A program made the translations under genes and the position numbers. A DNA stretch of 64,000 bases from Phallusia mammillata (taxonomy: Eukaryota): contig OZ281497.1 of NCBI GenBank assembly GCA_965637545.1, positions 19,282,001 to 19,346,000 on the forward strand, written 5' to 3'. The notes beneath the pieces were generated by a model, which was not told the origin of the DNA, did no database searches, and saw only the letters and a program-made list of their open reading frames with translations. Positions 40,401-64,000 of this stretch are shown piece after piece. Within the stretch, counting starts at the first letter, position 1; every line of letters begins with the position of its first letter.

Positions 40401-43400
40401 CGCGACGAACGGGTTTCCACATTTCCGCTTTCGGTTTTGATCGAATTTCCTGTGTGAAAAATGTTTCTACTTTAACCATCGGACCTTTAGCAAACCAATG
40501 ACGAGCGTATATGGATTCCATTACATATAAGGAGTTTGGAACCGTTTGTTACATGTACATTTAGAACCACGGTTCAATAAAAGAAATGCGGTTTTTAGAC
40601 CAGGATGCTCCATACGCTGTTTGCTTTTTGGGTATGTCTTCGAATACTAAATGGGTTGGTGACTTTGCGGGTACTGATCTATTTCAAGAAATAGTTTGTA
40701 TGTTACGTACGTCGCGACGAGACATGTCTGGGTTCATTGGCAAGTTAACGGCAATTTATAACTCAACTCCGGTTCAACATAAAAGTATTTGACGTATCAG
40801 CCTGACGTATGACGTACGTAGAGCAATACTTTGCACACTTTACCGGATATCAGGTCGCAACATGACGTTACGCATCTTAATGCGGGATGCAAAACGCAGC
40901 ACGTGATCCTTCGTTTCCTTTGGTGGAGAATAAGACAAGTAAGATTTTATTTGGGTTGGTCCCGAGTACGTCACTTCACTGGTCAACTTCAATACCATTT
41001 CAATCGCTTATTGGCGCAGTACGTCACTCTACATACGTAAGTTACGTTCGCACCGTATCTTTTACAAAATGAGTTATGCGTACAACGGAAGCAACTAAAA
41101 AGGCGACGATAGTAATAAAATACGTATTAGTGTCCCAGTGGAAACAGCGTGAATATAGAAGCACGTCATGTAACTGAAGTCGCACGAATATGCCAAGTAG
41201 TTGCGAAATTTCGCTCACGTGATTTATAATGCGCTCTGGATGGGACGTTGCATCACATGCGGAAAACGGACATTGTGACGTCACAATTGGCGCTAATTCG
41301 AATGACGCAAGTGTGAGATTACAATGGAAAGTTAGTGCGATTGCCAAATTTAGACCAAAGCCCGATTTAGACTAATCGGACATTATAGAATCACTGGATT
41401 AAAAAACTGTTTGTATCCGGACATATTTAACTAAAGTAGCTTTATTACAACTGTTGGCGTTAATATAATACATGTTGATCACTCAAGTCGCTGCTCTTGC
41501 TTGTAAAGTCCATGGCGTAAATACAACACCTTATAAAAAACTACAGCTGCGCTTAGTGTTGACATGTTGGCAATATTTACACAAAGAAGAGCTTACACAA
41601 AATGATGAAAAATGTCGGTCCAATTTTACTCAAACATTTTTCTACTGTTTCATTGATGGACATCACACCTTGGTTATATCAACAAGGTTGACAAACATGC
41701 AAGGTTTTTGTTTTATTTTAAATACTGTTTGAAAAAAATGCTAGCAGGTAGTAATTAGTTGGTTTATGAACTGACCTTTTAAACCGCTGAATCATAAGGC
41801 GTCTCGACAAACCTTTAAAAACAGTTTTGTAATCTGTAGGTTTTCGTTATTTTTCGTTATAATTCGTGTAGTTGTTAATCGACCAATCCTGCCTCACCCA
41901 CACCACAAATGTGAGTTTCTTCCTAATGTTGCCGCTTAATGAATTTCCACCTATGTTTTAAACAGCAAATGTGAACAACGTTACGTGAAGTGTTGCCTCC
42001 CTTGAGCGTGTAACACTGACGTCACGCGAGATGCCAAAACTGATAAGATTTGCCACGACCTTTTTAACTTGTTTCTAATATTTGGAATTCAACTTTACGA
42101 CCTTTTCCATCGCCTACTTTTACATTTGGCCTACATTGTTTACAACAAGACGATTCAATGTTAGCGAAGTTCAAAAGTTTCAACGTATTTAATCAAGTAA
42201 AATGCGGTGACTTGAACTTTTTGTCAGATTTGTTAAACCATTGCGCTGTTTGACCATAAGCCATCGTGAAAAATTGCAGCTTAAATGTAATAAGCTGCAG
42301 AAAGTTTAGCTCTTTTAAAGATTACTTTTACTTTACGCTGCTGTGGCAGTATGAAAAACAGCTTTACTCTTATTAAATGGCTTATCTAAGATCAATACTG
42401 TTGTCAACATCCCGGAAGAGATGTTGTCTGTTCGCGTAAGGATCGTTCTGGGTCAAGAAATGATCGAAGTGATGTGAATAGATTATATCATAAATTTGCC
42501 CAGTTGCCTCATATATAGTCATTATTCAACCTTAGACGTGACAAAAGGTGTTCTTAATGACGGCCGATAACCTTCGACGTATCGGCGCGAATGAATGTGA
42601 AACTGCTTTGTGCGTTCGTTTCTAGGCAACCTGGAACACAGTGCTATCCCTATCAATCTTTTGTTATCGCAAACTGCGTCAAATGCGCGGTGGTTACAGA
42701 ATTCGCTCACAGGAAATTATCTGTGCTTGTCAAGTGTAAATGTACTCTTGTGCAAAACTGAGGTCCCTCATCCCACTGAACCCTACAAAACAAATCTTAA
42801 CTACGTCATGTATGCTTTTACTTACTGTGACGTGCACGTTGACCTAAAACAACAACAAGGTTCGTGCCAATCGGAAGTTATAATGACGTAATATTTTTCA
42901 AAGAGATCGTGACAAAATTTTTTCTCGGGTTGCATGTATTTTAGACGTGTGCACTGTAGGCTTACCTTAGGAGTTAAGTGTTTGTACATAAAGACTGTTT
43001 GCACTTGGGTCAATAAAATTTCGGCACAATAGAGTTTGTTGGCACCGCACGCAGTCATGGCAAGACAAACAACTTTTACATCGATCTCGTCGCTAGGATA
43101 ACGTAATAGATCAAATACAATTTCCTTTATAATGCAAACTTAAGTATTGCCGAACGCTCGCAAATTACACTTGAACAAACGTCTCCTCTTCTCAATTTTT
43201 CTGCTATTTTGACCATCATGATCTTATATATTTATAGCGTTGTAGTTTTTATCTTTCACAAAACAACAGCTTGCAAAACAAAATGTGTTTGTACAAGTTT
43301 ATTCCAAGTACTTATAAAAAGAAACGCAAGATGTCGTACCACGCAAATAGAGCTTAAACATTTTTACGATGTCAGTAAAAAAGCAATCTCCAAACTATTT

Positions 43401-55814: not shown

Positions 55815-57628
55815 ATGTCGGACAATTACATACCAGTTGTCGATTTCGAAGCATATAATTTGGAAAGGAAAGAATGCTTGCAAGAAGATCTTACGAAAAT
55901 TGGAAAACAACTTGTCGACGCTTTCTCCAGTATTGGTTTTGTGTACATAAAAAATCACGGTATATCTGAGTAAGTGATGTTTGCAATTTTTCAAATTGTA
56001 GAAGAATACAAGTTTGAATGTTTTAGGTCTTACTTAAAAAACCTTGAGACTGTCACAGAAAGGTTTTTCACAAGTCCAGATGAGGAGAAACAACGTTGGG
56101 ACGAAAAACATTTGGTTGGATTGGTATTGGGAAGGAAAAGCTAAGGTGAGCCCATTTGCGTTTCCATTTTGCTGTTTGAAACTATTATTCTGATCTAGAC
56201 TGCATAAGAAACGGTTTGTTTTGCATTTTACCCAGAGCGGATCCGAGTTTACCTGGAGATTACAAGGAAGCGTTTAATATAGATGGAAATCTATTCACTC
56301 GAAATAAAAGTGAATGGCCGGATGACATTGCTCCAGGTTTCTCGTGTAAAATCAAGGATTTTATGGAACGCGCAAAAAAATTGTCGCTTCGCATTCTTCA
56401 TGCTCTCGCTATTCTTGAATTAAAGACTTGAATTAAAGGTTGTCGTTCATTTGTGCTTGCAGTAATCAATAAAGGCTGATGACTTTTTAACCACATTTCT
56501 ATTACTACTGTATGAAGTCGTATGCTTATCATTACAAGTTCTTGTTAGCCTAATAAGTTTGCTACTGGATTACACACAAATTTGTGTCAAAATTTACTTC
56601 TAAGATTACAATTATACTTTAAAATTTAAGTGTTGTATTTTTCAATATATCGCTCTAATTTTTAGGACGAGTTTTTCTTTAACAAGTGTCACAGCAAAAT
56701 ACATACCAGTAACAATCCTACCACCGCCAGGTCTCTTTATTACCCCCCATTGCCAGATGATTTGCTGCCACAGCAGATGAGGTTCGGCGATCATAGCGAC
56801 AACACTTCAATCTCACTTGTTTTCCAGGATGATGTTGGCGGTTTGCAGGTTAACTTTAATATAAAATACCTACATGGATCGCAATTTGCTGACTTGAAGC
56901 AAATTTTGTGTGAAGGTTTTAAGAGCTGACCGCGTGTTTGCTGATGCAACACCTATTAAGGGAACTGTCCTAGTGAATATCGGCGATATTTTGCAACACT
57001 GGACCAACCACAAGCTTTTGTCCACCGTAAGACACACCGGTTACTAAAAGTTATTGACAAATCGCGACAAAATAGAGTTTCACTTGCTTCTAATATTCAG
57101 CAGCACAAAACACCACATTGTATTAAAAAAAATTCGCATGTACGTCGAGAAATCTCAAAAAGATAAGTCCATGAAGTGTATTTGTTTTGTTTCTGAAGTA
57201 TATTGTAGATGGAGACCCTTTTTTTAAAGTTGTAGCACCAAGGATTAAAGTCATGTAAAATATCGTTCTACCATCATTGAAATAGAGGATAATATCAGGC
57301 TGTTTTGACTTTGATTCTTCTTATTTAATATCTAGTATCCGATTTGATTTTGATTTAGTTTGTGTCTATGTTTAACTCTAATTATTTCTGTTATATTTAG
57401 ATACACCGGGTAATTATTAAAGAAGGAGAGTTAAGGAACAAACTGGTTCGACGTTCATTGGTTTATTTCGTTATTCCCGACAATGACGTGTTCATTAACG
57501 AGCCGCTTGCCTACAAAGACGAATCTTTGAATGAAGTGAATGTTGAACCGCATAAGCTAATCACAGCTAAAGACTGGCTCATGGAAAAATTGGCTGGTTA
57601 TTGGAATTTTACAGAGGACGATGATTAG
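55815..57628 (+). pseudogene. 2OG-Fe(II) dioxygenase (DIOX_N + 2OG-FeII_Oxy, IPNS-like) copy 1, apparently disrupted; exons 55815-55969, 56027-56145, 56236-56438, 56666-56848, 56916-57026, 57401-57628
   Basis: IPVVDF, GFVYIKNHGI, PGDYKEAF, DHSD..SISLVFQDDVGGLQ, LVNIGDILQHWTN, STIHRV, RRSLVYF. Frameshift near 56100 gives TAA at 56142; a 12-bp duplication (CTTGAATTAAAG) gives TGA at 56429. Either lesion could be an assembly error or a null allele. Confidence 0.8.
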
Positions 57629-59198
57629 ATATTGAAGTTCTACAAGTGTTTTCGTAATTTTTGCACTAATTTATGTAAAACCTTTTGCTTCAATGTAAAA
57701 AAATATGTACTGAGTTTCGGTATTGTTGCAAATATGTATGAAAAATAAACTCTTTGCAGCAACATGACGTTATTGTCGTAATAACAAATTGTTTTGTTAA
57801 GTGATGCGTTGATATGTCTAACGCTTGTTCACTTCAGTGTTCTGAAAAACATGTGTAATCTATACACGTCGCTTTGACATGTCAACAAATTGATTTGCTG
57901 ACAGGGTACATCCCTACAAGGTTAATCAAAGTAGAAAGGTTGAGCAAAAATAGCTTAAGGGAAAGAGGTATTTAATTCTTATTACTGCTTCTAACTTATA
58001 TGGTGTAGCGATTTTAACGGCAGTCAGATTATATGCAGCAGTGGTCCAAAGTTGCAAATTTAACTGCAATGCAAATTTAACAGTATGACCTGAAACGTAT
58101 TTGAAAAATGCCTGAAAATTGTTTTTAATTGCTGCTGTAATTTTTACACCCGACGCCGCAAAACCTTCAACCGATTGGAAAAGTAGAAACTGTTTTTTTA
58201 AGCAGAACGGTGGGTTTATTGGTATCGCTGTGTGGACTCGAGATGGGTAAAAACTACATTCCGATTATTGACTTTGAGTCGTGCATTTTTCCAAAAGATG
58301 AATGTTCACATGATGATTTCAGTCGAATCGACAAACAGCTGGTCGAGGAATTCTCCAACGTTGGTTTTGTGTATCTGAAAAATTATGGCTTTACAGAGTA
58401 CAGGCAATATTGAAATGAAATGAAGAATTTCGATGGGATTTTAAACCAAACAATGTGTGCAGTGCCTACATAGAAAGACTTCACGAAGTGACTGAAAGAT
58501 GTTGTACCAGTCCCACTGAAGAGAAGATGCGGTGCAAGTGAAAAGGCGCCAGCGCTTTCGTTTATATCGAAATGGAAAAGGAAAATTCAACGTAGGTATA
58601 TTAGGACGCCCTATAGTGGAATTTTTAATTTTATGACACGCGCGCAGAAGTTGTCACTTCGTATTCTTCATGCACTGACAATTGGAATGGGGTTAAAGGT
58701 CAGCTCCAAGTTTATTAGCTAACGATATGAGTTTACAAAACCAAACATGTTTTTTCGGGCAACCCTGATAATCGGAAGAAAATTCTCATCTGAAATGTAT
58801 TTTCTAAGGTATTCGATTGTTTTACTTTTTATATTACAACCAAGATAATTGTTTTTGTCGAAAACGCTTGATACCTGCTAGGTGAATAATATACATTACT
58901 ACTTTTGGCTGGTAAAAATCATTTAATGTTAACTCATTTTACAAATAAAAAAAGTTCAAACCCAACCACAAGATGCCTTTCAGGACGAAAACTTATTTAT
59001 TAACTACATTTGCATTGTTAATTTCAGGTCAAAGGTTTCGATGGTTGTTATGTAGATGCGAAACCCATTAGGGATACAGTACTCGTTAACGTCGGCGATA
59101 TTTTGCAGCATTGGACCAATGGCAAACTCAAATCAACGGTAAGTTGTCGACAAGTTTGAGCACGAGTATGAGTTTTTTGGACATGAAGAAAAATCCTA

Positions 59199-59250
59199 AG
59201 CTGCAGACAGTGCACACTGTTTCGACCTATAAGGTCTCATCAGTGCAGCT
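59199..59250 (-). ncRNA. Type I hammerhead ribozyme (minus strand, perfect consensus)
   Basis: Minus strand reads AGCTGCA-CTGATGA-GACC(TTATA)GGTC-GAA-ACAGT(GTGC)ACTGT-C-TGCAGCT: 7-bp stem I, intact core, 4-bp stem II, 5-bp stem III, GUC cleavage triplet (cut between 59206 and 59205). Confidence 0.9.
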
Positions 59251-59370
59251 GGTGACGAGAGATCGGCCGCATTGGCTAGTGTAGCCATTCAACGTTGTAT
59301 CCTGTGCTCCCAACAAACTGGAGTGCCGTTGAATGGCTACACTAGCCAATGCGGCCGATCTCTCGTCACC

Positions 59371-59422
59371 AGCTGCACTGATGAGAACTTATAGGTCGAA
59401 ACAGTGTGCACTGTCTGCAGCT
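59371..59422 (+). ncRNA. Type I hammerhead ribozyme (plus strand, one stem II mismatch)
   Basis: AGCTGCA-CTGATGA-GAAC(TTATA)GGTC-GAA-ACAGT(GTGC)ACTGT-C-TGCAGCT; predicted cut between 59415 and 59416. Confidence 0.85.
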
Positions 59423-60862
59423 TATCATTTATTGGCTCTATGCTTTTACAAGAAAAATCCTGATCTGTTAACCACCAAACACAATTACAGATTAGGCAAA
59501 ATAGTGTTACATGGATGTTACGTAGTTCCATAGAAGTTGCCTATATATTTAGCTCCTATTGTCATATGTTAATCACTGTGCTGTGGGTTTTCTGCCGTTC
59601 TTTTTAAGATGTAATTTAATGCTATTTCCGGCTATACGTTATCACGATGGCGTTGAAGACTACAAGCAATTTTCGTTGTTTCTAGGTACGCAGGGTTGTG
59701 GCCAAAGCTCACGAGAGGCAGGGAAGATCCACTCGACGTTCGTTGGTTTATTTTGTGTTGCCTCACAATGATGGTTTATTTAATGAGCCGTTGGTGTACA
59801 AAGATGAAAGTCTAAATAGTGAAGACGATTTATCCATCAAACCAATTCTTCTTGAAAAGTGGTTGTTTGAAAAAATGAAACAGTTTTGGGAAGTTACACG
59901 GTTACAGAAACAGAAGAAATGTTGAAATAACCTGTATCCTTTCGTTGTTTGACATGTATTTAGTACATAAGGTATATATAACATTTGAGATTGAAATTAT
60001 TGTCATGTCATTTTGCAGTTGCTGTTTGGCACATTCTACTTGAACTTTTTTTAAGCCTTTGTTGTATTTTGCAAAAATTTTATTACATTGACCCAATGGC
60101 TTGTCAATATGTACAGCAGATTATCATGTTTTTATAACTCAGATACGAACAGCTAAAGTTGCGAAAAAAATGCAGGTCGAAAAGGTCAAACTCCCGACAT
60201 CCTGAACTAATTGTTTTTAGAAAGTTAAAACAACGATAAAAGAAAAGATGCTCGATTACATTTCAAAACACGTTTAACACAAAAGTCACCACGAGCCGAG
60301 TTGCGGAGTCTTGCATAAACATTTAACATGACTCCAAGTAACTTACCATATGGCATATGGGACCATATGCGTTGATATGTCGACTTCTAAACCGAAACTC
60401 CTTGGAAGTTGAAATATTAACCTAATGGTTAAATACAAATTCTATTTTGTTTTAAAAGGCCAGTTTCACGTCTCGCGACGTGTTTCCTTTAGTTATACGT
60501 TTTTTTTTGTGAAATATAAATAAAATAGTCATTGAAATTTCACGATATACGACCCAATATAAAGCATGGTAAATACACGTCATGGTGATGTCGTTAAATA
60601 AAAACACTATTTCCTCTTATTTTAATAAAAGCTCCGCGCCAAACAGATTCTAGTTAACTCTTCGTGTGAACATTCCTTGTTTGCAAAACTGCACCACTCA
60701 AAATCAATAACTGGAATGTAACTTTTTCCGTTCTCTATTTAGCACAGCAGTACCAACCAACCTATACTTCTACTATTTTGATTCACAAAAACGTCTGTTG
60801 TATACAAAGCAATGCAATAAATTACTGACGCTGACAGCAAGGCGGTTTTCATTGGTATTTAT

Positions 60863-62074
60863 AGTCACTTGTTAGTCATTTTCCGTATGTTTGGGTCGTA
60901 TGTGGATGTGGGGGTCGTGTCAATGATCGAACCTAAGAAGGTTAAGGTCGTCTTGCAGTTTTCCAGGACGCGCATGTTGGCGGTTTTCAGTTTAACGTTA
61001 ACATGAATAGCTTACATATGTGGGTTACTGCGCTGACACCGCGCATATTTTGTGTTGAGGGTTTGAAATCCAACCGCACATTTGCTGATGCAACATTTAT
61101 CAAGGGAACTTGCTTGCTGAATATAGGCGATATTTTATTTATGACACAGGACCAAGCACAAGCTTTTTCTAACGTAAACAAAACCATTGAAATGTGTTGA
61201 CAACTCGCCGCTAAAGTGTATTTTTACTCCATATTTGCTAATTAACTATTATATTCACAAGGCAAAAATGCGTGTATTTTTTTGCATGGTTTATACCATA
61301 TTTGGTATACTGCTAAAACTCATTGGAAAATTACCGTTATGAAGGCAAATCTGCCTTGCAAGGTTGTTAAGAAAATCCCACATACATTTTAAAATAGCTA
61401 AAAATTATAACTGTTTGGAAAGTCTGTTATGTTGCAAATTGTTTCGTAGACTACTGTTCATGAATATTTACACGGTATGCTTGTTACACAGACAACAAAA
61501 TAAGAAACAGTAAATACGTCATCATATAGAAAAAGTAATAAGGAAAATCTAGTTGCTCTTTTTCGTGAAACGATAAAGTATTTATCATCTACTTTTTATG
61601 GTTTTCCTTATACGCCGTTGGTGCAAAAGATGAAAGTTTAAATAATGAAGACGAAGTATCCATCAAACCAATGCTTCTTGAAAAACGGCTGTTTGAAAAA
61701 ATGAAACAATTTTAGGACGTTGCAGAAACAGAATAAATGTTTAAATAACTTGTATTTCTTTGTTATTTGACATGTATTTGGTGTATGAGATATAACATTT
61801 GAAACTGAAATCAGTGTCATTTCAGATTGCAGTTGCTGTTTGGCTCATCCGATTGCATTCGGGTTGCGATGAAGCATATGTTATATTTTTTGCTAAACAG
61901 TTTATTACATAGATGCAATGGCTTGACATTTTGTACAGCACGCCGTCGCGCTTTGCTTGGTGCAGTTCAACAAACAAACTTTAGGCACTATTTTTCCTTA
62001 AACATTTTTTAATGCTGATGTATTTGGCAGTGACACAAACTTGCAGGTCACATGTTCCATTACATTTCTAAGAA
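60863..62074 (+). repeat. Segmental tandem duplication, copy 1, with decayed dioxygenase exon 4/5/6 fragments and 3' flank
   Basis: Near-identical to 62790-64000 (offset about 1927 bp). Contains TTTGCTGATGCAAC..AAGGGAACT..GAATATAGGCGATATTTT (exon 5-like) and GAAGACGAAGTATCCATCAAACCAATG (exon 6-like) with disabling changes. Confidence 0.9.
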
Positions 62075-62621
62075 CAGCAAATGTCACCACAAGTCGTGTT
62101 GCAGAATCGTGATTAAGCATTTATCATGGCTGTAAGTAAAGTTTGTCGATATCAAAGTTGAAAAACTAACTTGATGGTTGATCAAATACAAATTATTTTT
62201 TTCTGTACTTTGAAACGAAATTTCTGAGCAGTTATGAGCTTACATTGCAAAAGCGTCTTACAGCGTGTTTCGTATATAGTTCCGTTTTTAGCAAAATGTA
62301 AAAAAACGACTTTGAAAAGTGACGAATTACGATCCGATATAAAGTAAATACAAAGTATGATGACATGTCATGACCATGTCGTTAACAAACAATAAAAACA
62401 CATCTTATATTGTTTTCCTGAAAAACGACCAGCAATTATATCATTTAAAAAATTATTACATGCATTGACACGCTCCTGTTTTGTGTCAACCAGTGTTTAC
62501 ATATGTACACTCGTTTCTTTTTCAAAAAAGAAGAATGTGTGAACATTGTGTGACGCAAAACTATAATTTTACATTTGTTACAATTAAAAACAGTATTTCC
62601 TCCCAAAGCGAATCAAACCAT

Positions 62622-62789
62622 TTAACTTCCTGAACTGTCCTGATCGTTTTTTGTAACATCCCAAAACTGTTTCATCTTTCCAAGTATCCACTCTTCGATA
62701 GTCATTTCACTGATTGGTTCGGCGTCTTTCACGTTTAGACTTTTGTCTTTGTACACCAATGGCTTGTTTATAAGAGCGTCGTTGTTTGC
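62622..62789 (-). pseudogene. Inverted, truncated last exon of another dioxygenase paralog
   Basis: Minus strand reads ANNDALINKPLVYKDKSLNVKDAEPISEMTIEEWILGKMKQFWDVTKNDQDSSGS*, homologous to PDNDVFINEPLAYKD...WLMEKL. It is cut exactly at the start of duplication copy 2. Confidence 0.8.
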
Positions 62790-64000
62790 AGTCACTTGTT
62801 AGTCATTTTCCGTATGTTTGGGTTGTATGTGGATGTGGGGGTCGTGTCAATGATCGAACCTAAGAAGGTTAAGGTCGTCTTGCAGTTTTCCATGACGCGC
62901 ATGTTGGCGGTTTTCAGTTTAACGTTAACATGAATAGCCTACATATGTGGGTTACTGCGCTGACACCGCGCATATTTTGTGTTGAGGGTTTGAAATCCAA
63001 CCGCACATTTGCTGATGCAACATTTATCAAGGGAACTTGCTTGCTGAATATAAGCGATATTTTATTTATGACACAGGACCAAGCACAAGCTTTTTCTAAC
63101 GTAAACAAAACCATTGAAATGTGTTGACAACTCGCCGCTAAAGTGTATTTTTACTCCATATTTGCTAATTAACTATTATATTCACAAGGCAAAAATGCGT
63201 GTATTTTTTTGCATGTTTTATACCATATTTGGTATACTGCTAAAACTCATTGGAAAATTACCGTTATGAAGGCAAATCTGCCTTGCAAGGTTGTTAAGAA
63301 AATCCCACATACATTTTAAAATAGCTAAAAATTATAACTGTTTGGAAAGTCTGTTTTGTTGCAAATTGTTTCGTAGACTACTGTTCATGAATATTTACAC
63401 GGTATGCTTGTTACACAGACAACAAAATAAGAAACAGTAAATACGTCATCATATAGAAAAAGTAATAAGGAAAATCTAGTTGCTCTTTTTCGTGAAACGA
63501 TAAAGTATTTATCATCTACTTTTTATGGTTTTCCTTATACGCCGTTGGTGCAAAAGATGAAAGTTTAAATAATGAAGACGAAGTATCCATCAAACCAATG
63601 CTTCTTGAAAAACGGCTGTTTGAAAAAATGAAACAATTTTAGGACGTTGCAGAAACAGAATAAATGTTTAAATAACTTGTATTTCTTTGTTATTTGACAT
63701 GTATTTGGTGTATGAGATATAACATTTGAAACTGAAATCAGTGTCATTTCAGATTGCAGTTGCTGTTTGGCTCATCCGATTGCATTCGGGTTGCGATGAA
63801 GCATATGTTACATTTTTGCTACACATTTTATTACATAGATACAATGGCTTGACATTTTGTACAGCACGCCGTCGCGCTTTGCTTGGTGCAGTTCAACAAA
63901 CAAACTTTAGGCACTATTTTTCCTTAAACATTTTTTAATGCTGATGTATTTGGCAGTGACACAAACTTGCAGGTCACATGTTCCATTACATTTCTAAGAA
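62790..64000 (+). repeat. Segmental tandem duplication, copy 2 (runs off the window end)
   Basis: Near-identical to 60863-62074 with only scattered substitutions and indels. Confidence 0.9.

What the first reader, a model, noticed from the sequence alone, without database searches (positions are those of the whole stretch)
59199..59422. Fold-back element with a complete hammerhead ribozyme on each strand
Seen: the element is a 96-bp inverted repeat with one mismatch and a 32-nt spacer, flanked by TA. Each arm carries a full type I hammerhead (7-bp stem I, CUGAUGA, 4-bp stem II with UUAUA loop, GAA, 5-bp stem III, GUC). The element ends coincide exactly with the outer end of stem I, so a transcript of either strand ends in a ribozyme. 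Known: type I hammerheads occur in Penelope-like pLTRs and in retrozymes, where they lie in direct repeats; a ribozyme in both polarities with a rod-like fold is typical of viroid-like RNAs. Inference: this may be an undescribed non-autonomous family with ribozyme termini, or an inverted pLTR pair made by template switching. In a full-length RNA the antisense arm is made first and should sequester the ribozyme in a long hairpin, giving a self-inhibited switch and a Dicer/ADAR substrate. The plus-strand ribozyme is sense to the host pre-mRNA.
Basis: partly seen in the sequence, partly recalled or inferred. Interest (0 to 1): 0.93.

Follow-up and report, generated by a model that had tools for sequence, protein, structure and literature searches.

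The report
Head-to-head hammerhead retroelement insertion
The fold-back is one 252-bp copy of a hammerhead-ribozyme retroelement present in thousands of copies, inserted into a gene intron as two truncated copies joined head to head, which is the known insertion pattern of Penelope-like retrotransposons and not a new kind of element.

Summary
The inverted repeat is real: 96-97-bp arms, one mismatch, a 32-nt centre. The minus-strand arm carries a complete type I hammerhead. The single arm mismatch (A59387) breaks helix II of the plus-strand copy.

Contigs of two DNA runs show a family of thousands of copies whose 3' edge is at 59449/59450, not 59422. An exact 12-bp target-site duplication (AAGAAAAATCCT) abuts 59198 and 59449, so "TA" is not the duplication.

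The usual family unit is not palindromic. It continues 5' of about 59295-59307 with other conserved sequence. Other copies carry inverted junctions at many different places, and some are tandem.

The locus therefore reads: duplication, inverted 5'-truncated copy without tail (59198-59294), direct 5'-truncated copy with a 27-nt tail (59295-49449 read as 59295-59449), duplication. This matches published Penelope-like insertions: an inverted truncated partner, an optional tail at one end, reverse transcription from two adjacent internal sites, and both target strands extended.

Best reading: a dead-on-arrival copy of a metazoan non-LTR retrozyme, probably mobilised by Penelope-like enzymes. Both ribozymes are locked in a hairpin of -208 kcal/mol.

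First readers of this scan noted similar head-to-head hammerhead insertions, and Penelope elements with tails, elsewhere in this genome. Those notes are unchecked. Ribozyme cleavage, circular RNA and the centre in other individuals remain untested.

The parts
59186..59197 (.). Left copy of the 12-bp target-site duplication AAGAAAAATCCT
   Evidence: Direct repeat D1. It abuts the insertion exactly; 1 of 20,000 random placements reached 12 nt.
59198..59294 (-). Inverted, 5'-truncated copy of the family's 3' part, without tail. Its outer end lies 7-8 nt beyond the ribozyme cleavage site.
   Evidence: Reverse complement equals 59327-59423 except at one base. An independent DNA run (X2) has an exact contig over 59072-59221 that covers this outer junction.
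59199..59250 (-). Complete type I hammerhead motif on the minus strand, with predicted cleavage between 59206 and 59205
   Evidence: RF00163 at 22.8 bits, E 0.0036, below gathering. The minimum-energy fold is the hammerhead. Pattern count 2 against 0.00 expected. Cleavage not tested.
59295..59449 (+). Direct, 5'-truncated copy of the family unit (155 nt). 59295-59326 is the single-copy 'spacer' of the fold-back.
   Evidence: Family contigs match from about 59294-59307 rightwards and continue leftwards with a different, conserved sequence. At 59307, 86 and 79 contigs do so with agreement 0.65. RNA contigs match from 59294.
59371..59422 (+). Plus-strand hammerhead copy with an A.G mismatch in helix II (A59387 opposite G59395). 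Predicted cleavage between 59415 and 59416. Sense to the host pre-mRNA.
   Evidence: fold lacks helix II; only a RAGATH-1 partial match of 19.2 bits. Most of the family depth lies on the arm that carries C at this position.
59423..59449 (+). 27-nt 3' 'tail', present at the right end only
   Evidence: It belongs to the family: depth 1.55 million against about 400 in the flank, and 104 contigs in each DNA run diverge only after 59450. It has no counterpart at the left end. It corresponds to the optional tail of Penelope-like insertions (PMC8557442, PMC11167929).
59450..59461 (.). Right copy of the 12-bp target-site duplication
   Evidence: X2 has an exact contig over 59422-59700.
59139..59685 (+). 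Host intron (547 nt) of a 2OG-Fe(II) oxygenase paralogue. The insertion plus duplication makes up 264 nt of it.
   Evidence: Exon 59028-59138 matches PF03171 at 31.3 bits, cut-off 23. A GTAAGT donor lies at 59139, and an RNA contig leaves the genome at 59141. The acceptor TTCTAG ends at 59685, in frame with the ORF that ends at 59925. The acceptor is inferred.

Best explanation
This is a single, recent, dead-on-arrival insertion of a short non-coding hammerhead retroelement of the metazoan 'non-LTR retrozyme' kind. The family has thousands of copies in this genome.

The element entered the intron by target-primed reverse transcription of the Penelope-like type. The target was cut with a 12-bp stagger. 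Two cDNAs were started just 3' of the ribozyme. One started at the distal site and kept a 27-nt tail (right end, 59449). The other started at the proximal site next to helix I and has no tail (left end, 59198). Both stopped early and were joined head to head at 59294/59295.

The outcome is a 97-bp inverted repeat with a hammerhead at each outer end. The fold-back is therefore a by-product of insertion, not a designed feature.

Both copies run uncut through the ribozyme cleavage site. The template RNA was therefore uncleaved, multimeric or circular.

At this locus the ribozymes are probably inert. The plus-strand copy has a broken helix II, and both are locked in a hairpin of about -208 kcal/mol. 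Both copies also lack the 5' part of the unit, more than 120 nt.

Shown here: the anatomy, the duplication, the family size and edges, and the variable junctions in other copies. Inferred: the enzyme (a Penelope-like RT/endonuclease acting in trans), the two-strand priming, and ribozyme activity.
For: Anatomy and duplication.

Family size: 8,946 and 5,131 contigs were laid in two DNA runs. Summed word depth is 2.6 million against about 400 in the flank in X1, and 375,000 against about 32 in X2.

3' edge with tail: 104 contigs in each run diverge after 59450 into unrelated sequence.

Non-palindromic usual unit: 86 and 79 contigs continue left of 59307 with a shared different sequence. One RNA contig carries 127 nt upstream of the 59307-59450 match, so the unit is at least 271 nt.

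Variable inverted junctions in other copies: 59214/59323, 59263/59350, 59279/59350, 59307/59388, 59307/59394, 59311/59365 and 59324/59384. A 3.3-kb RNA contig joins 59197-59258 to 59311-59419. 'Goes back' joints show tandem copies.

Private junction: the words across the centre are held only by run X1, not by DNA runs X2-X4, which hold the arms and flanks.

Independent support for outward-facing ends: X2 has exact contigs over both outer junctions.

Literature:
- Penelope-like insertions often carry an adjacent inverted 5'-truncated copy and a 30-40-bp tail at one end only (PMC8557442).
- A purified Penelope-like protein cuts and extends both target strands. It starts reverse transcription at two adjacent internal sites, and the interval between them is the tail (PMC11167929).
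- Paired hammerheads on opposite strands 100-700 bp apart were already noted in Penelope-bearing genomes (PMC4209133).
- Metazoan type I hammerhead repeats of 170-400 bp are non-autonomous and have long duplications (PMC7229834).
- These repeats are related to Penelope terminal repeats (bioRxiv 10.64898/2026.07.22.740005).
Against: No reverse transcriptase or GIY-YIG ORF lies in the window, and no other family copy does either. Linkage to an autonomous Penelope-like element rests on the insertion signature, on the literature and on unchecked first-reader notes.

The tail is 27 nt, slightly under the published 30-40 bp.

The hammerhead scores below Rfam's gathering threshold, and cleavage was not tested.

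The centre of the fold-back is seen only in run X1, which may be the sample the assembly came from. X2 holds a contig at single-copy depth that is colinear over 59202-59385 but differs at 19 letters and 2 gaps. I could not explain this contig.

The RNA runs are contigs only. They cannot show cleavage, circles or true expression, because DNA carry-over from a family of thousands of copies is not excluded.
Confidence: 0.75

Rival explanations
1. A heritable fold-back subfamily. A master element that is itself a hairpin with ribozyme termini is transcribed and re-inserted as such, which is the reader's 'undescribed non-autonomous family with ribozyme termini'.
For: X2 holds a contig at single-copy depth that is colinear across the left arm, the centre and 59 nt of the right arm, at about 10% divergence. 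This could be a second copy with the same architecture. First-reader notes describe 250-300-bp elements with inverted ribozyme ends elsewhere in the genome (unchecked).
Against: The junction words are absent from every DNA run except X1. Inverted junctions in other copies lie at many different positions, each in 1-3 contigs. The majority unit continues 5' with non-palindromic conserved sequence. The two ends differ, one with a tail and one without. A 97-bp perfect hairpin RNA would be a poor template.
Confidence: 0.08
2. The outer ends are real, but the centre is a post-insertion rearrangement or an assembly or long-read fold-back artefact.
For: The centre words occur only in X1, probably the assembly's own sample. 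At 59300 the window's T has a depth of only about 53 in X1 and none in X2, while all other laid contigs read C.
Against: An independent run (X2) has exact contigs over both outer junctions with the ribozyme ends pointing outwards, so an inverted arrangement must exist there too. A single private T/C difference at 59300 would remove almost all centre words and explains without any artefact. Fold-backs with other junctions are common in the family.
Confidence: 0.08
3. A miniature inverted-repeat DNA transposon (Tc1/mariner-type, TA duplication) whose terminal inverted repeats happen to contain hammerhead motifs.
For: Near-perfect terminal inverted repeats.
Against: The family edge lies 27 nt beyond the right repeat. 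A 12-bp duplication abuts the true ends. Most family copies are not fold-backs, and tandem copies exist. The breakpoints of the inverted arm vary between copies.
Confidence: 0.03
4. A DNA copy of a viroid-like or rod-like circular RNA replicon with ribozymes in both polarities.
For: A hammerhead motif on each strand and a rod-like fold.
Against: The two ribozymes are one sequence duplicated in inverted orientation and differ at 1 of 97 positions. They are not distinct plus and minus ribozymes. The usual unit carries one polarity only. The element sits as thousands of genomic copies with duplications.
Confidence: 0.01

Closest known systems
Metazoan non-LTR retrozymes (type I hammerhead repeats of corals, mussels, axolotl; Cervera & de la Pena 2020, PMC7229834)
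   Same: A canonical type I hammerhead with a stable helix III. A non-coding unit of a few hundred bp (at least 271 nt here). Thousands of copies, tandem as well as dispersed. Duplications longer than 4 bp. GC below 50%. As in mussels, no obvious loop 1/loop 2 contacts.
   Different: This locus is not a tandem array. It is a head-to-head pair of truncated copies with a one-sided tail. That paper does not describe inverted arrangements ('inverted' occurs 0 times). Circular RNA was not tested here.
Penelope-like element insertions (pseudo-LTR, inverted 5'-truncated partner, 30-40-bp tail; Craig et al. 2021 PMC8557442; Frangieh et al. 2024 PMC11167929)
   Same: An inverted 5'-truncated copy adjacent to the direct copy. 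A tail at one end only. Two alternative 3' ends a few tens of nt apart. A variable, long duplication. A hammerhead near the 3' end.
   Different: No RT/GIY-YIG ORF; the whole insert is 252 bp. The hammerhead has a 5-bp helix III and can act as a monomer, unlike the minimal dimer-dependent variants usual in Penelope terminal repeats. The tail is 27 nt.
Paired minimal hammerheads on opposite strands near truncated Penelope-like elements (Cervera & de la Pena 2014, PMC4209133)
   Same: Two hammerhead motifs 100-700 bp apart on opposite strands, attributed to truncated Penelope-like insertions.
   Different: Those are minimal hammerheads of autonomous elements. Here a canonical hammerhead of a non-autonomous family is involved, and the insertion anatomy is resolved to the base.
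L1 'twin priming' inversions
   Same: A retro-insertion with an inverted 5' segment, explained by priming from both target strands.
   Different: In twin priming the inverted and direct parts are adjacent, non-overlapping parts of one RNA. Here both parts copy the same 3' region, which needs two templates, or a multimeric or circular one.

Membership tests
Hammerhead ribozyme, type I (Rfam RF00163) | Conserved core (CUGANGA ... GAAA ... UH) with helices II and III closed and helix I open | tested here: met
   Minus-strand copy: all core letters are present, with helices of 7, 4 and 5 bp. Plus-strand copy: the core is intact, but helix II has an A.G mismatch at 59387/59395.
Hammerhead ribozyme, type I (Rfam RF00163) | Score at or above the curated gathering threshold | tested here: not met
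   22.8 bits against 34, and no hit at gathering. Twenty natural type I hammerheads from metagenomes with the same core, helix II and loop also miss the threshold, some of them beside pistol ribozymes. The model is therefore insensitive to this variant.
Hammerhead ribozyme, type I (Rfam RF00163) | Mg2+-dependent self-cleavage after GUC | not testable with these tools
   Contig data show no RNA ends (table 6: none).
Metazoan non-LTR retrozyme | Non-coding repeat of about 170-400 bp that carries a type I hammerhead, in many copies, some tandem | tested here: met
   The unit is at least 271 nt. There are thousands of copies and 'goes back' (tandem) joints. No ORF with a Pfam match lies in the element.
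Metazoan non-LTR retrozyme | Expressed as unit-length linear and circular RNA | tested here: inconclusive
   RNA-run contigs contain family copies, some embedded in contigs of 1.8-3.3 kb. Contigs cannot show circles, and DNA carry-over is not excluded.
Penelope-like insertion signature | Inverted 5'-truncated copy adjacent to the direct copy | tested here: met
   59198-59294 (inverted) is joined to 59295-59449 (direct). The junction is private to this locus and varies in other copies.
Penelope-like insertion signature | Optional tail of 30-40 bp at one end only, reflecting two adjacent RT start sites | tested here: met
   A 27-nt tail at the right end only. The tail is part of the family. It is slightly shorter than published.
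Penelope-like insertion signature | Autonomous partner (RT plus GIY-YIG endonuclease) in the same genome with a related 3' end | not testable with these tools
   None in the window. First-reader notes report Penelope elements with a duplication, a 30-nt tail and an inverted arm in this genome, unchecked.
Miniature inverted-repeat DNA transposon with TA duplication | Family ends at the terminal inverted repeats, flanked by a fixed TA duplication | tested here: not met
   The family edge is at 59449/59450. The duplication is 12 bp. The usual unit is not a fold-back.
Viroid-like RNA with ribozymes in both polarities | Distinct plus and minus ribozymes in one unit-length replicating circle | tested here: not met
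   The two motifs are inverted duplicates that differ at 1 of 97 positions. The usual unit has one polarity.

The most novel reading that the evidence does not exclude
Fold-back copies such as this one may be a regular by-product of Penelope-type priming on both target strands from circular or multimeric retrozyme RNA. When they land in introns of expressed genes they would be transcribed into perfect hairpins of about 97 bp, and these would be processed into small RNAs against the family's own ribozyme. Under this reading the family would keep seeding its own silencing triggers. The two end classes next to helix I would also be base-level genomic evidence that retrozymes are mobilised by Penelope enzymes that start internally on circular RNA.
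Probability: 0.15. Interest if true: 0.6.

Novelty: new member of a known kind. Interest (0 to 1): 0.35.

Why it matters
The published link between animal retrozymes and Penelope-like elements rests mainly on co-occurrence and on similarity of terminal repeats. This locus shows the complete Penelope insertion signature on a 252-bp non-coding hammerhead element: a long duplication, a one-sided tail, and an inverted truncated partner whose end sits at the second start site.

It also shows that the template was not cleaved at the ribozyme site. If a genome-wide census confirms the two end classes, that would be direct structural evidence for the mobilisation mechanism, and for the use of uncleaved or circular RNA as template.

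For annotation the point is practical. Hammerheads 'on both strands' in this genome are insertion artefacts of one family, not viroid-like or bidirectional ribozyme genes.

Tried and rejected
- Rfam at gathering thresholds over the whole window found nothing. The relaxed search gave sub-threshold hammerhead hits plus meaningless miRNA, CRISPR and snoRNA matches caused by the hairpin.
- My first motif pattern had the wrong spacing and found only a chance site. It was corrected.
- I aligned the equivalent intron of the neighbouring paralogue to look for an empty site. The introns cannot be aligned.
- A metagenome scan for the ribozyme core returned 20 loci. They are unrelated type I hammerheads, probably phage or bacterial, that share only the core, helix II and loop. 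None is a family member.
- A search for the family's conserved 5' extension in the window found no match. blastn of the element against the window found no other copy.
- A literature search for the ribozyme sequence gave no paper.
- The protein atlas, used to place the organism, gave only low-complexity look-alikes. I did not pursue the organism's identity.
- I tested whether X2's divergent centre contig is the same locus with the spacer flipped. A flip would give about 9 mismatches and 10 gap columns, not the observed 19 and 2, so I rejected it.
- I considered snap-back self-priming at the junction palindrome CAACGTTG. I found no matching microhomology in the cDNA and left it as unresolved inference.

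Full report
**What is in the sequence.**

The interval holds a near-perfect inverted repeat. The repeat finder reports arms 59191-59294 and 59327-59430 (97%) with 32 nt between them. A direct comparison gives 97-nt arms, 59198-59294 against 59327-59423, that differ at one base, 59387.

The hammerhead core pattern CTGATGAG-N8-16-CGAAAC occurs exactly twice in the 64-kb window, once on each strand inside the arms. Shuffles give 0.00 expected.

The minus-strand copy (59250 down to 59199) has everything a type I hammerhead needs:
- helix I of 7 bp, left open;
- CUGAUGA;
- helix II GACC/GGUC closed by UUAUA;
- GAA;
- helix III of 5 bp closed by GUGC;
- GUC, which puts cleavage between 59206 and 59205.

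Its minimum-energy fold is the hammerhead.

Rfam's type I model scores this copy at 22.8 bits (E 0.0036 for the 421-nt search), below the gathering score of 34. The whole-window search at gathering thresholds is empty. I do not count this against the motif. Twenty natural type I hammerheads pulled from metagenomes have the same core, helix II and loop, and those scanned also miss the threshold, including two that lie beside pistol ribozymes.

*The plus-strand ribozyme.* The single mismatch between the arms lies in helix II of the plus-strand ribozyme: A59387 faces G59395. The plus-strand copy loses helix II in its minimum-energy fold, and the type I model does not report it. Most of the family depth lies on the arm that carries C at this position, so the C state is the family's majority.

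*The ends.* An exact 12-nt direct repeat, AAGAAAAATCCT, lies at 59186-59197 and 59450-59461. It abuts 59198 and 59449 exactly. Among 20,000 random placements of a 252-bp interval in this window, with ±3 nt of freedom at each end, one reached 12 nt. The insertion is therefore 59198-59449. The right end carries 27 nt (59423-59449) beyond helix I that have no counterpart on the left. 'TA' is not the duplication.

**Family evidence from public runs.**

Contigs of two DNA runs and two RNA runs of the same organism were laid on 58950-59700 at 85% likeness.

- *Copy number.* 8,946 and 5,131 DNA contigs were laid. Summed word depth rises from about 400 (X1) and about 32 (X2) in the flanks to 2.6 million and 375,000 inside the element. 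The tool warns that this is no exact copy number, but it means thousands of copies.
- *3' edge.* The family's 3' edge is at 59449/59450. In each DNA run, 104 contigs turn into mutually unrelated AT-rich sequence there (agreement 0.44-0.47). The 27-nt tail therefore belongs to the family.
- *Usual unit.* It is not a fold-back. At 59307, 86 and 79 contigs continue leftwards with a shared sequence different from this locus (agreement 0.65). RNA contigs that match from 59294 continue leftwards in the same way. One RNA contig carries 127 nt upstream of its 59307-59450 match, so the unit is at least 271 nt.
- *Other fold-backs.* They exist with different junctions. 'Opposite strands' joints lie at 59214/59323, 59263/59350, 59279/59350, 59307/59388, 59307/59394, 59311/59365 and 59324/59384, each in 1-3 contigs. 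A 3.3-kb RNA contig joins 59197-59258 to 59311-59419.
- *Tandem copies.* 'Goes back' joints show them.
- *Variation among copies.* In the ribozyme part it is mainly C>T/G>A at the CpG formed by C11.1 and G12 (59397/59398 and their mirror 59224/59223; about 7-16% of depth in the two DNA runs). The part upstream of the ribozyme has sites split at about 40-54%. This is only a weak sign that the ribozyme is conserved across subfamilies. It also means a noticeable minority of copies have a dead core.

**Is this fold-back inherited or made on the spot?**

The 31-letter words across the centre (59262-59328) are held only by run X1. DNA runs X2-X4 hold the arms and flanks but not these words. A propagating fold-back master would put those words into every DNA run. 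The junction is therefore private to this locus.

There is a caveat. Only three words were sampled. The window's T at 59300 is itself private, because all other laid contigs read C, so one difference could hide the words.

X2 independently has exact contigs over 59072-59221 and 59422-59700. The insertion, with ribozyme ends pointing outwards on both sides, therefore exists in a second sample.

One item remains unexplained. X2 has a 194-nt contig at single-copy depth that is colinear over 59202-59385 but differs at 19 letters and 2 gaps. It is not a flipped spacer. It may be a second fold-back of similar build.

**Reading of the anatomy.**

From left to right the locus is:
- duplication;
- inverted copy of the family's 3' part, cut short at its 5' side and ending 7-8 nt past the cleavage site (59198-59294);
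- direct copy, cut short at 59295 and ending with the tail (59295-59449);
- duplication.

This is the published anatomy of Penelope-like insertions. Such insertions are often preceded by an adjacent inverted 5'-truncated copy and carry a 30-40-bp tail at one end only (PMC8557442). A purified Penelope-like protein cuts and extends both strands of the target. It starts reverse transcription at two adjacent internal sites of the RNA, and the stretch between them is the tail (PMC11167929).

Applied here, one cDNA started at the distal site (59449) and the other at the proximal site beside helix I (the equivalent of 59422/59423, now at 59198). Both stopped early and were joined. This step is inferred.

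Both copies run uninterrupted through the cleavage site. The template was therefore not cleaved there: it was an unprocessed, multimeric or re-ligated circular RNA. This fits the in vitro finding that unprocessed RNA is the substrate. It also fits the circular-RNA proposal for these elements.

The arm difference at 59387 may mean that two different template molecules were used, but a copying error explains it equally well.

**What the family is.**

It fits the metazoan non-LTR retrozymes on these counts: a canonical type I hammerhead with a stable helix III, a non-coding unit of a few hundred bp, thousands of tandem and dispersed copies, and long duplications (PMC7229834). These elements have been proposed, on co-occurrence and terminal-repeat similarity, to be non-autonomous derivatives of Penelope-like elements (bioRxiv 10.64898/2026.07.22.740005). 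Hammerhead pairs on opposite strands 100-700 bp apart were already noted near truncated Penelope-like elements (PMC4209133).

The window holds no RT or GIY-YIG ORF and no second family copy. First-reader notes of this scan report, elsewhere in this genome, the same kind of head-to-head hammerhead insertions, 273-281-nt units with 11-14-bp duplications, and Penelope elements with a duplication, a 30-nt tail and an inverted arm. These notes are unchecked leads. They agree with my reading, but I do not use them as support.

**Context and consequence.**

The insertion lies in a 547-nt intron (59139-59685) of a plus-strand 2OG-Fe(II) oxygenase paralogue. The upstream exon 59028-59138 matches PF03171. 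An RNA contig follows that exon and leaves the genome at the GTAAGT donor. The acceptor is inferred.

A transcript through the element folds into a hairpin of -208.5 kcal/mol (z = -36), while the isolated ribozymes fold at -12 to -18 kcal/mol. In the pre-mRNA the antisense arm is made first. The plus-strand ribozyme, already weakened in helix II, should therefore be sequestered.

I regard this copy as inert for self-cleavage. It is also incapable of further transposition, because both halves lack the 5' part of the unit. That the hairpin feeds Dicer or ADAR is possible for any long intronic inverted repeat, but nothing here tests it.

**Verdict.**

The 'ribozyme on each strand' is one ribozyme copied twice in opposite orientation during a Penelope-type retro-insertion, and one of the two copies is damaged. 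This is a new member of a known kind of element, showing a known insertion pattern. Its modest value is that the Penelope signature appears, base by base, on a short non-coding retrozyme copy.

Noticed in passing
L001-L020 (e.g. L004:7674-7698, L009:2055-2079): Twenty metagenome contigs carry type I hammerheads with exactly the same core, helix II and loop (GACC-UUAUA-GGUC) but unrelated helices I and III that co-vary. L004 and L009 also carry several pistol ribozymes above Rfam's threshold. None of the eight loci I scanned gave a hammerhead hit at gathering, so these hammerheads miss Rfam's threshold.
   Followed up: partly
window 42282-42308: A short palindrome, TTGCAGCTTA-AATGTAA-TAAGCTGCAG, repeats the element's terminal 10 nt on both strands with the ends facing each other (blastn E 0.11). 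It could be chance, or a remnant of two abutting element ends.
   Followed up: no
window 59202-59385 (run X2, contig record 11): A 194-nt contig at single-copy depth is colinear through the left arm, the centre and part of the right arm, but differs at 19 letters and 2 gaps. It is not explained by a flipped spacer. It may be a second fold-back copy of similar build, or a divergent allele.
   Followed up: partly
window 59223-59224, 59256-59257, 59364-59365, 59397-59398: Variation among family copies is concentrated in C>T/G>A changes at CpG dinucleotides. One of these is the CpG formed by the ribozyme's C11.1 and G12. This suggests methylation-driven decay that inactivates a noticeable minority of ribozyme cores.
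   Followed up: partly
window 56200-64000: A tandem array of 2OG-Fe(II) oxygenase paralogues. ORFs at 60869-61513 and 62796-63440 are nearly identical, which suggests a repeat with a period of about 1.9 kb. In the exon after the host intron (from 59686) the expected 'HRV' iron-binding histidine position reads VRRVV under the inferred splice, so the enzyme may lack a ligand. The splice site is not verified.
   Followed up: no
window 59150-59480 (run X16): A DNA run labelled as a second species (organism B) holds about the same share of words (0.37) as runs that hold only the arms. The family, at near identity, is therefore probably shared between two species.
   Followed up: no
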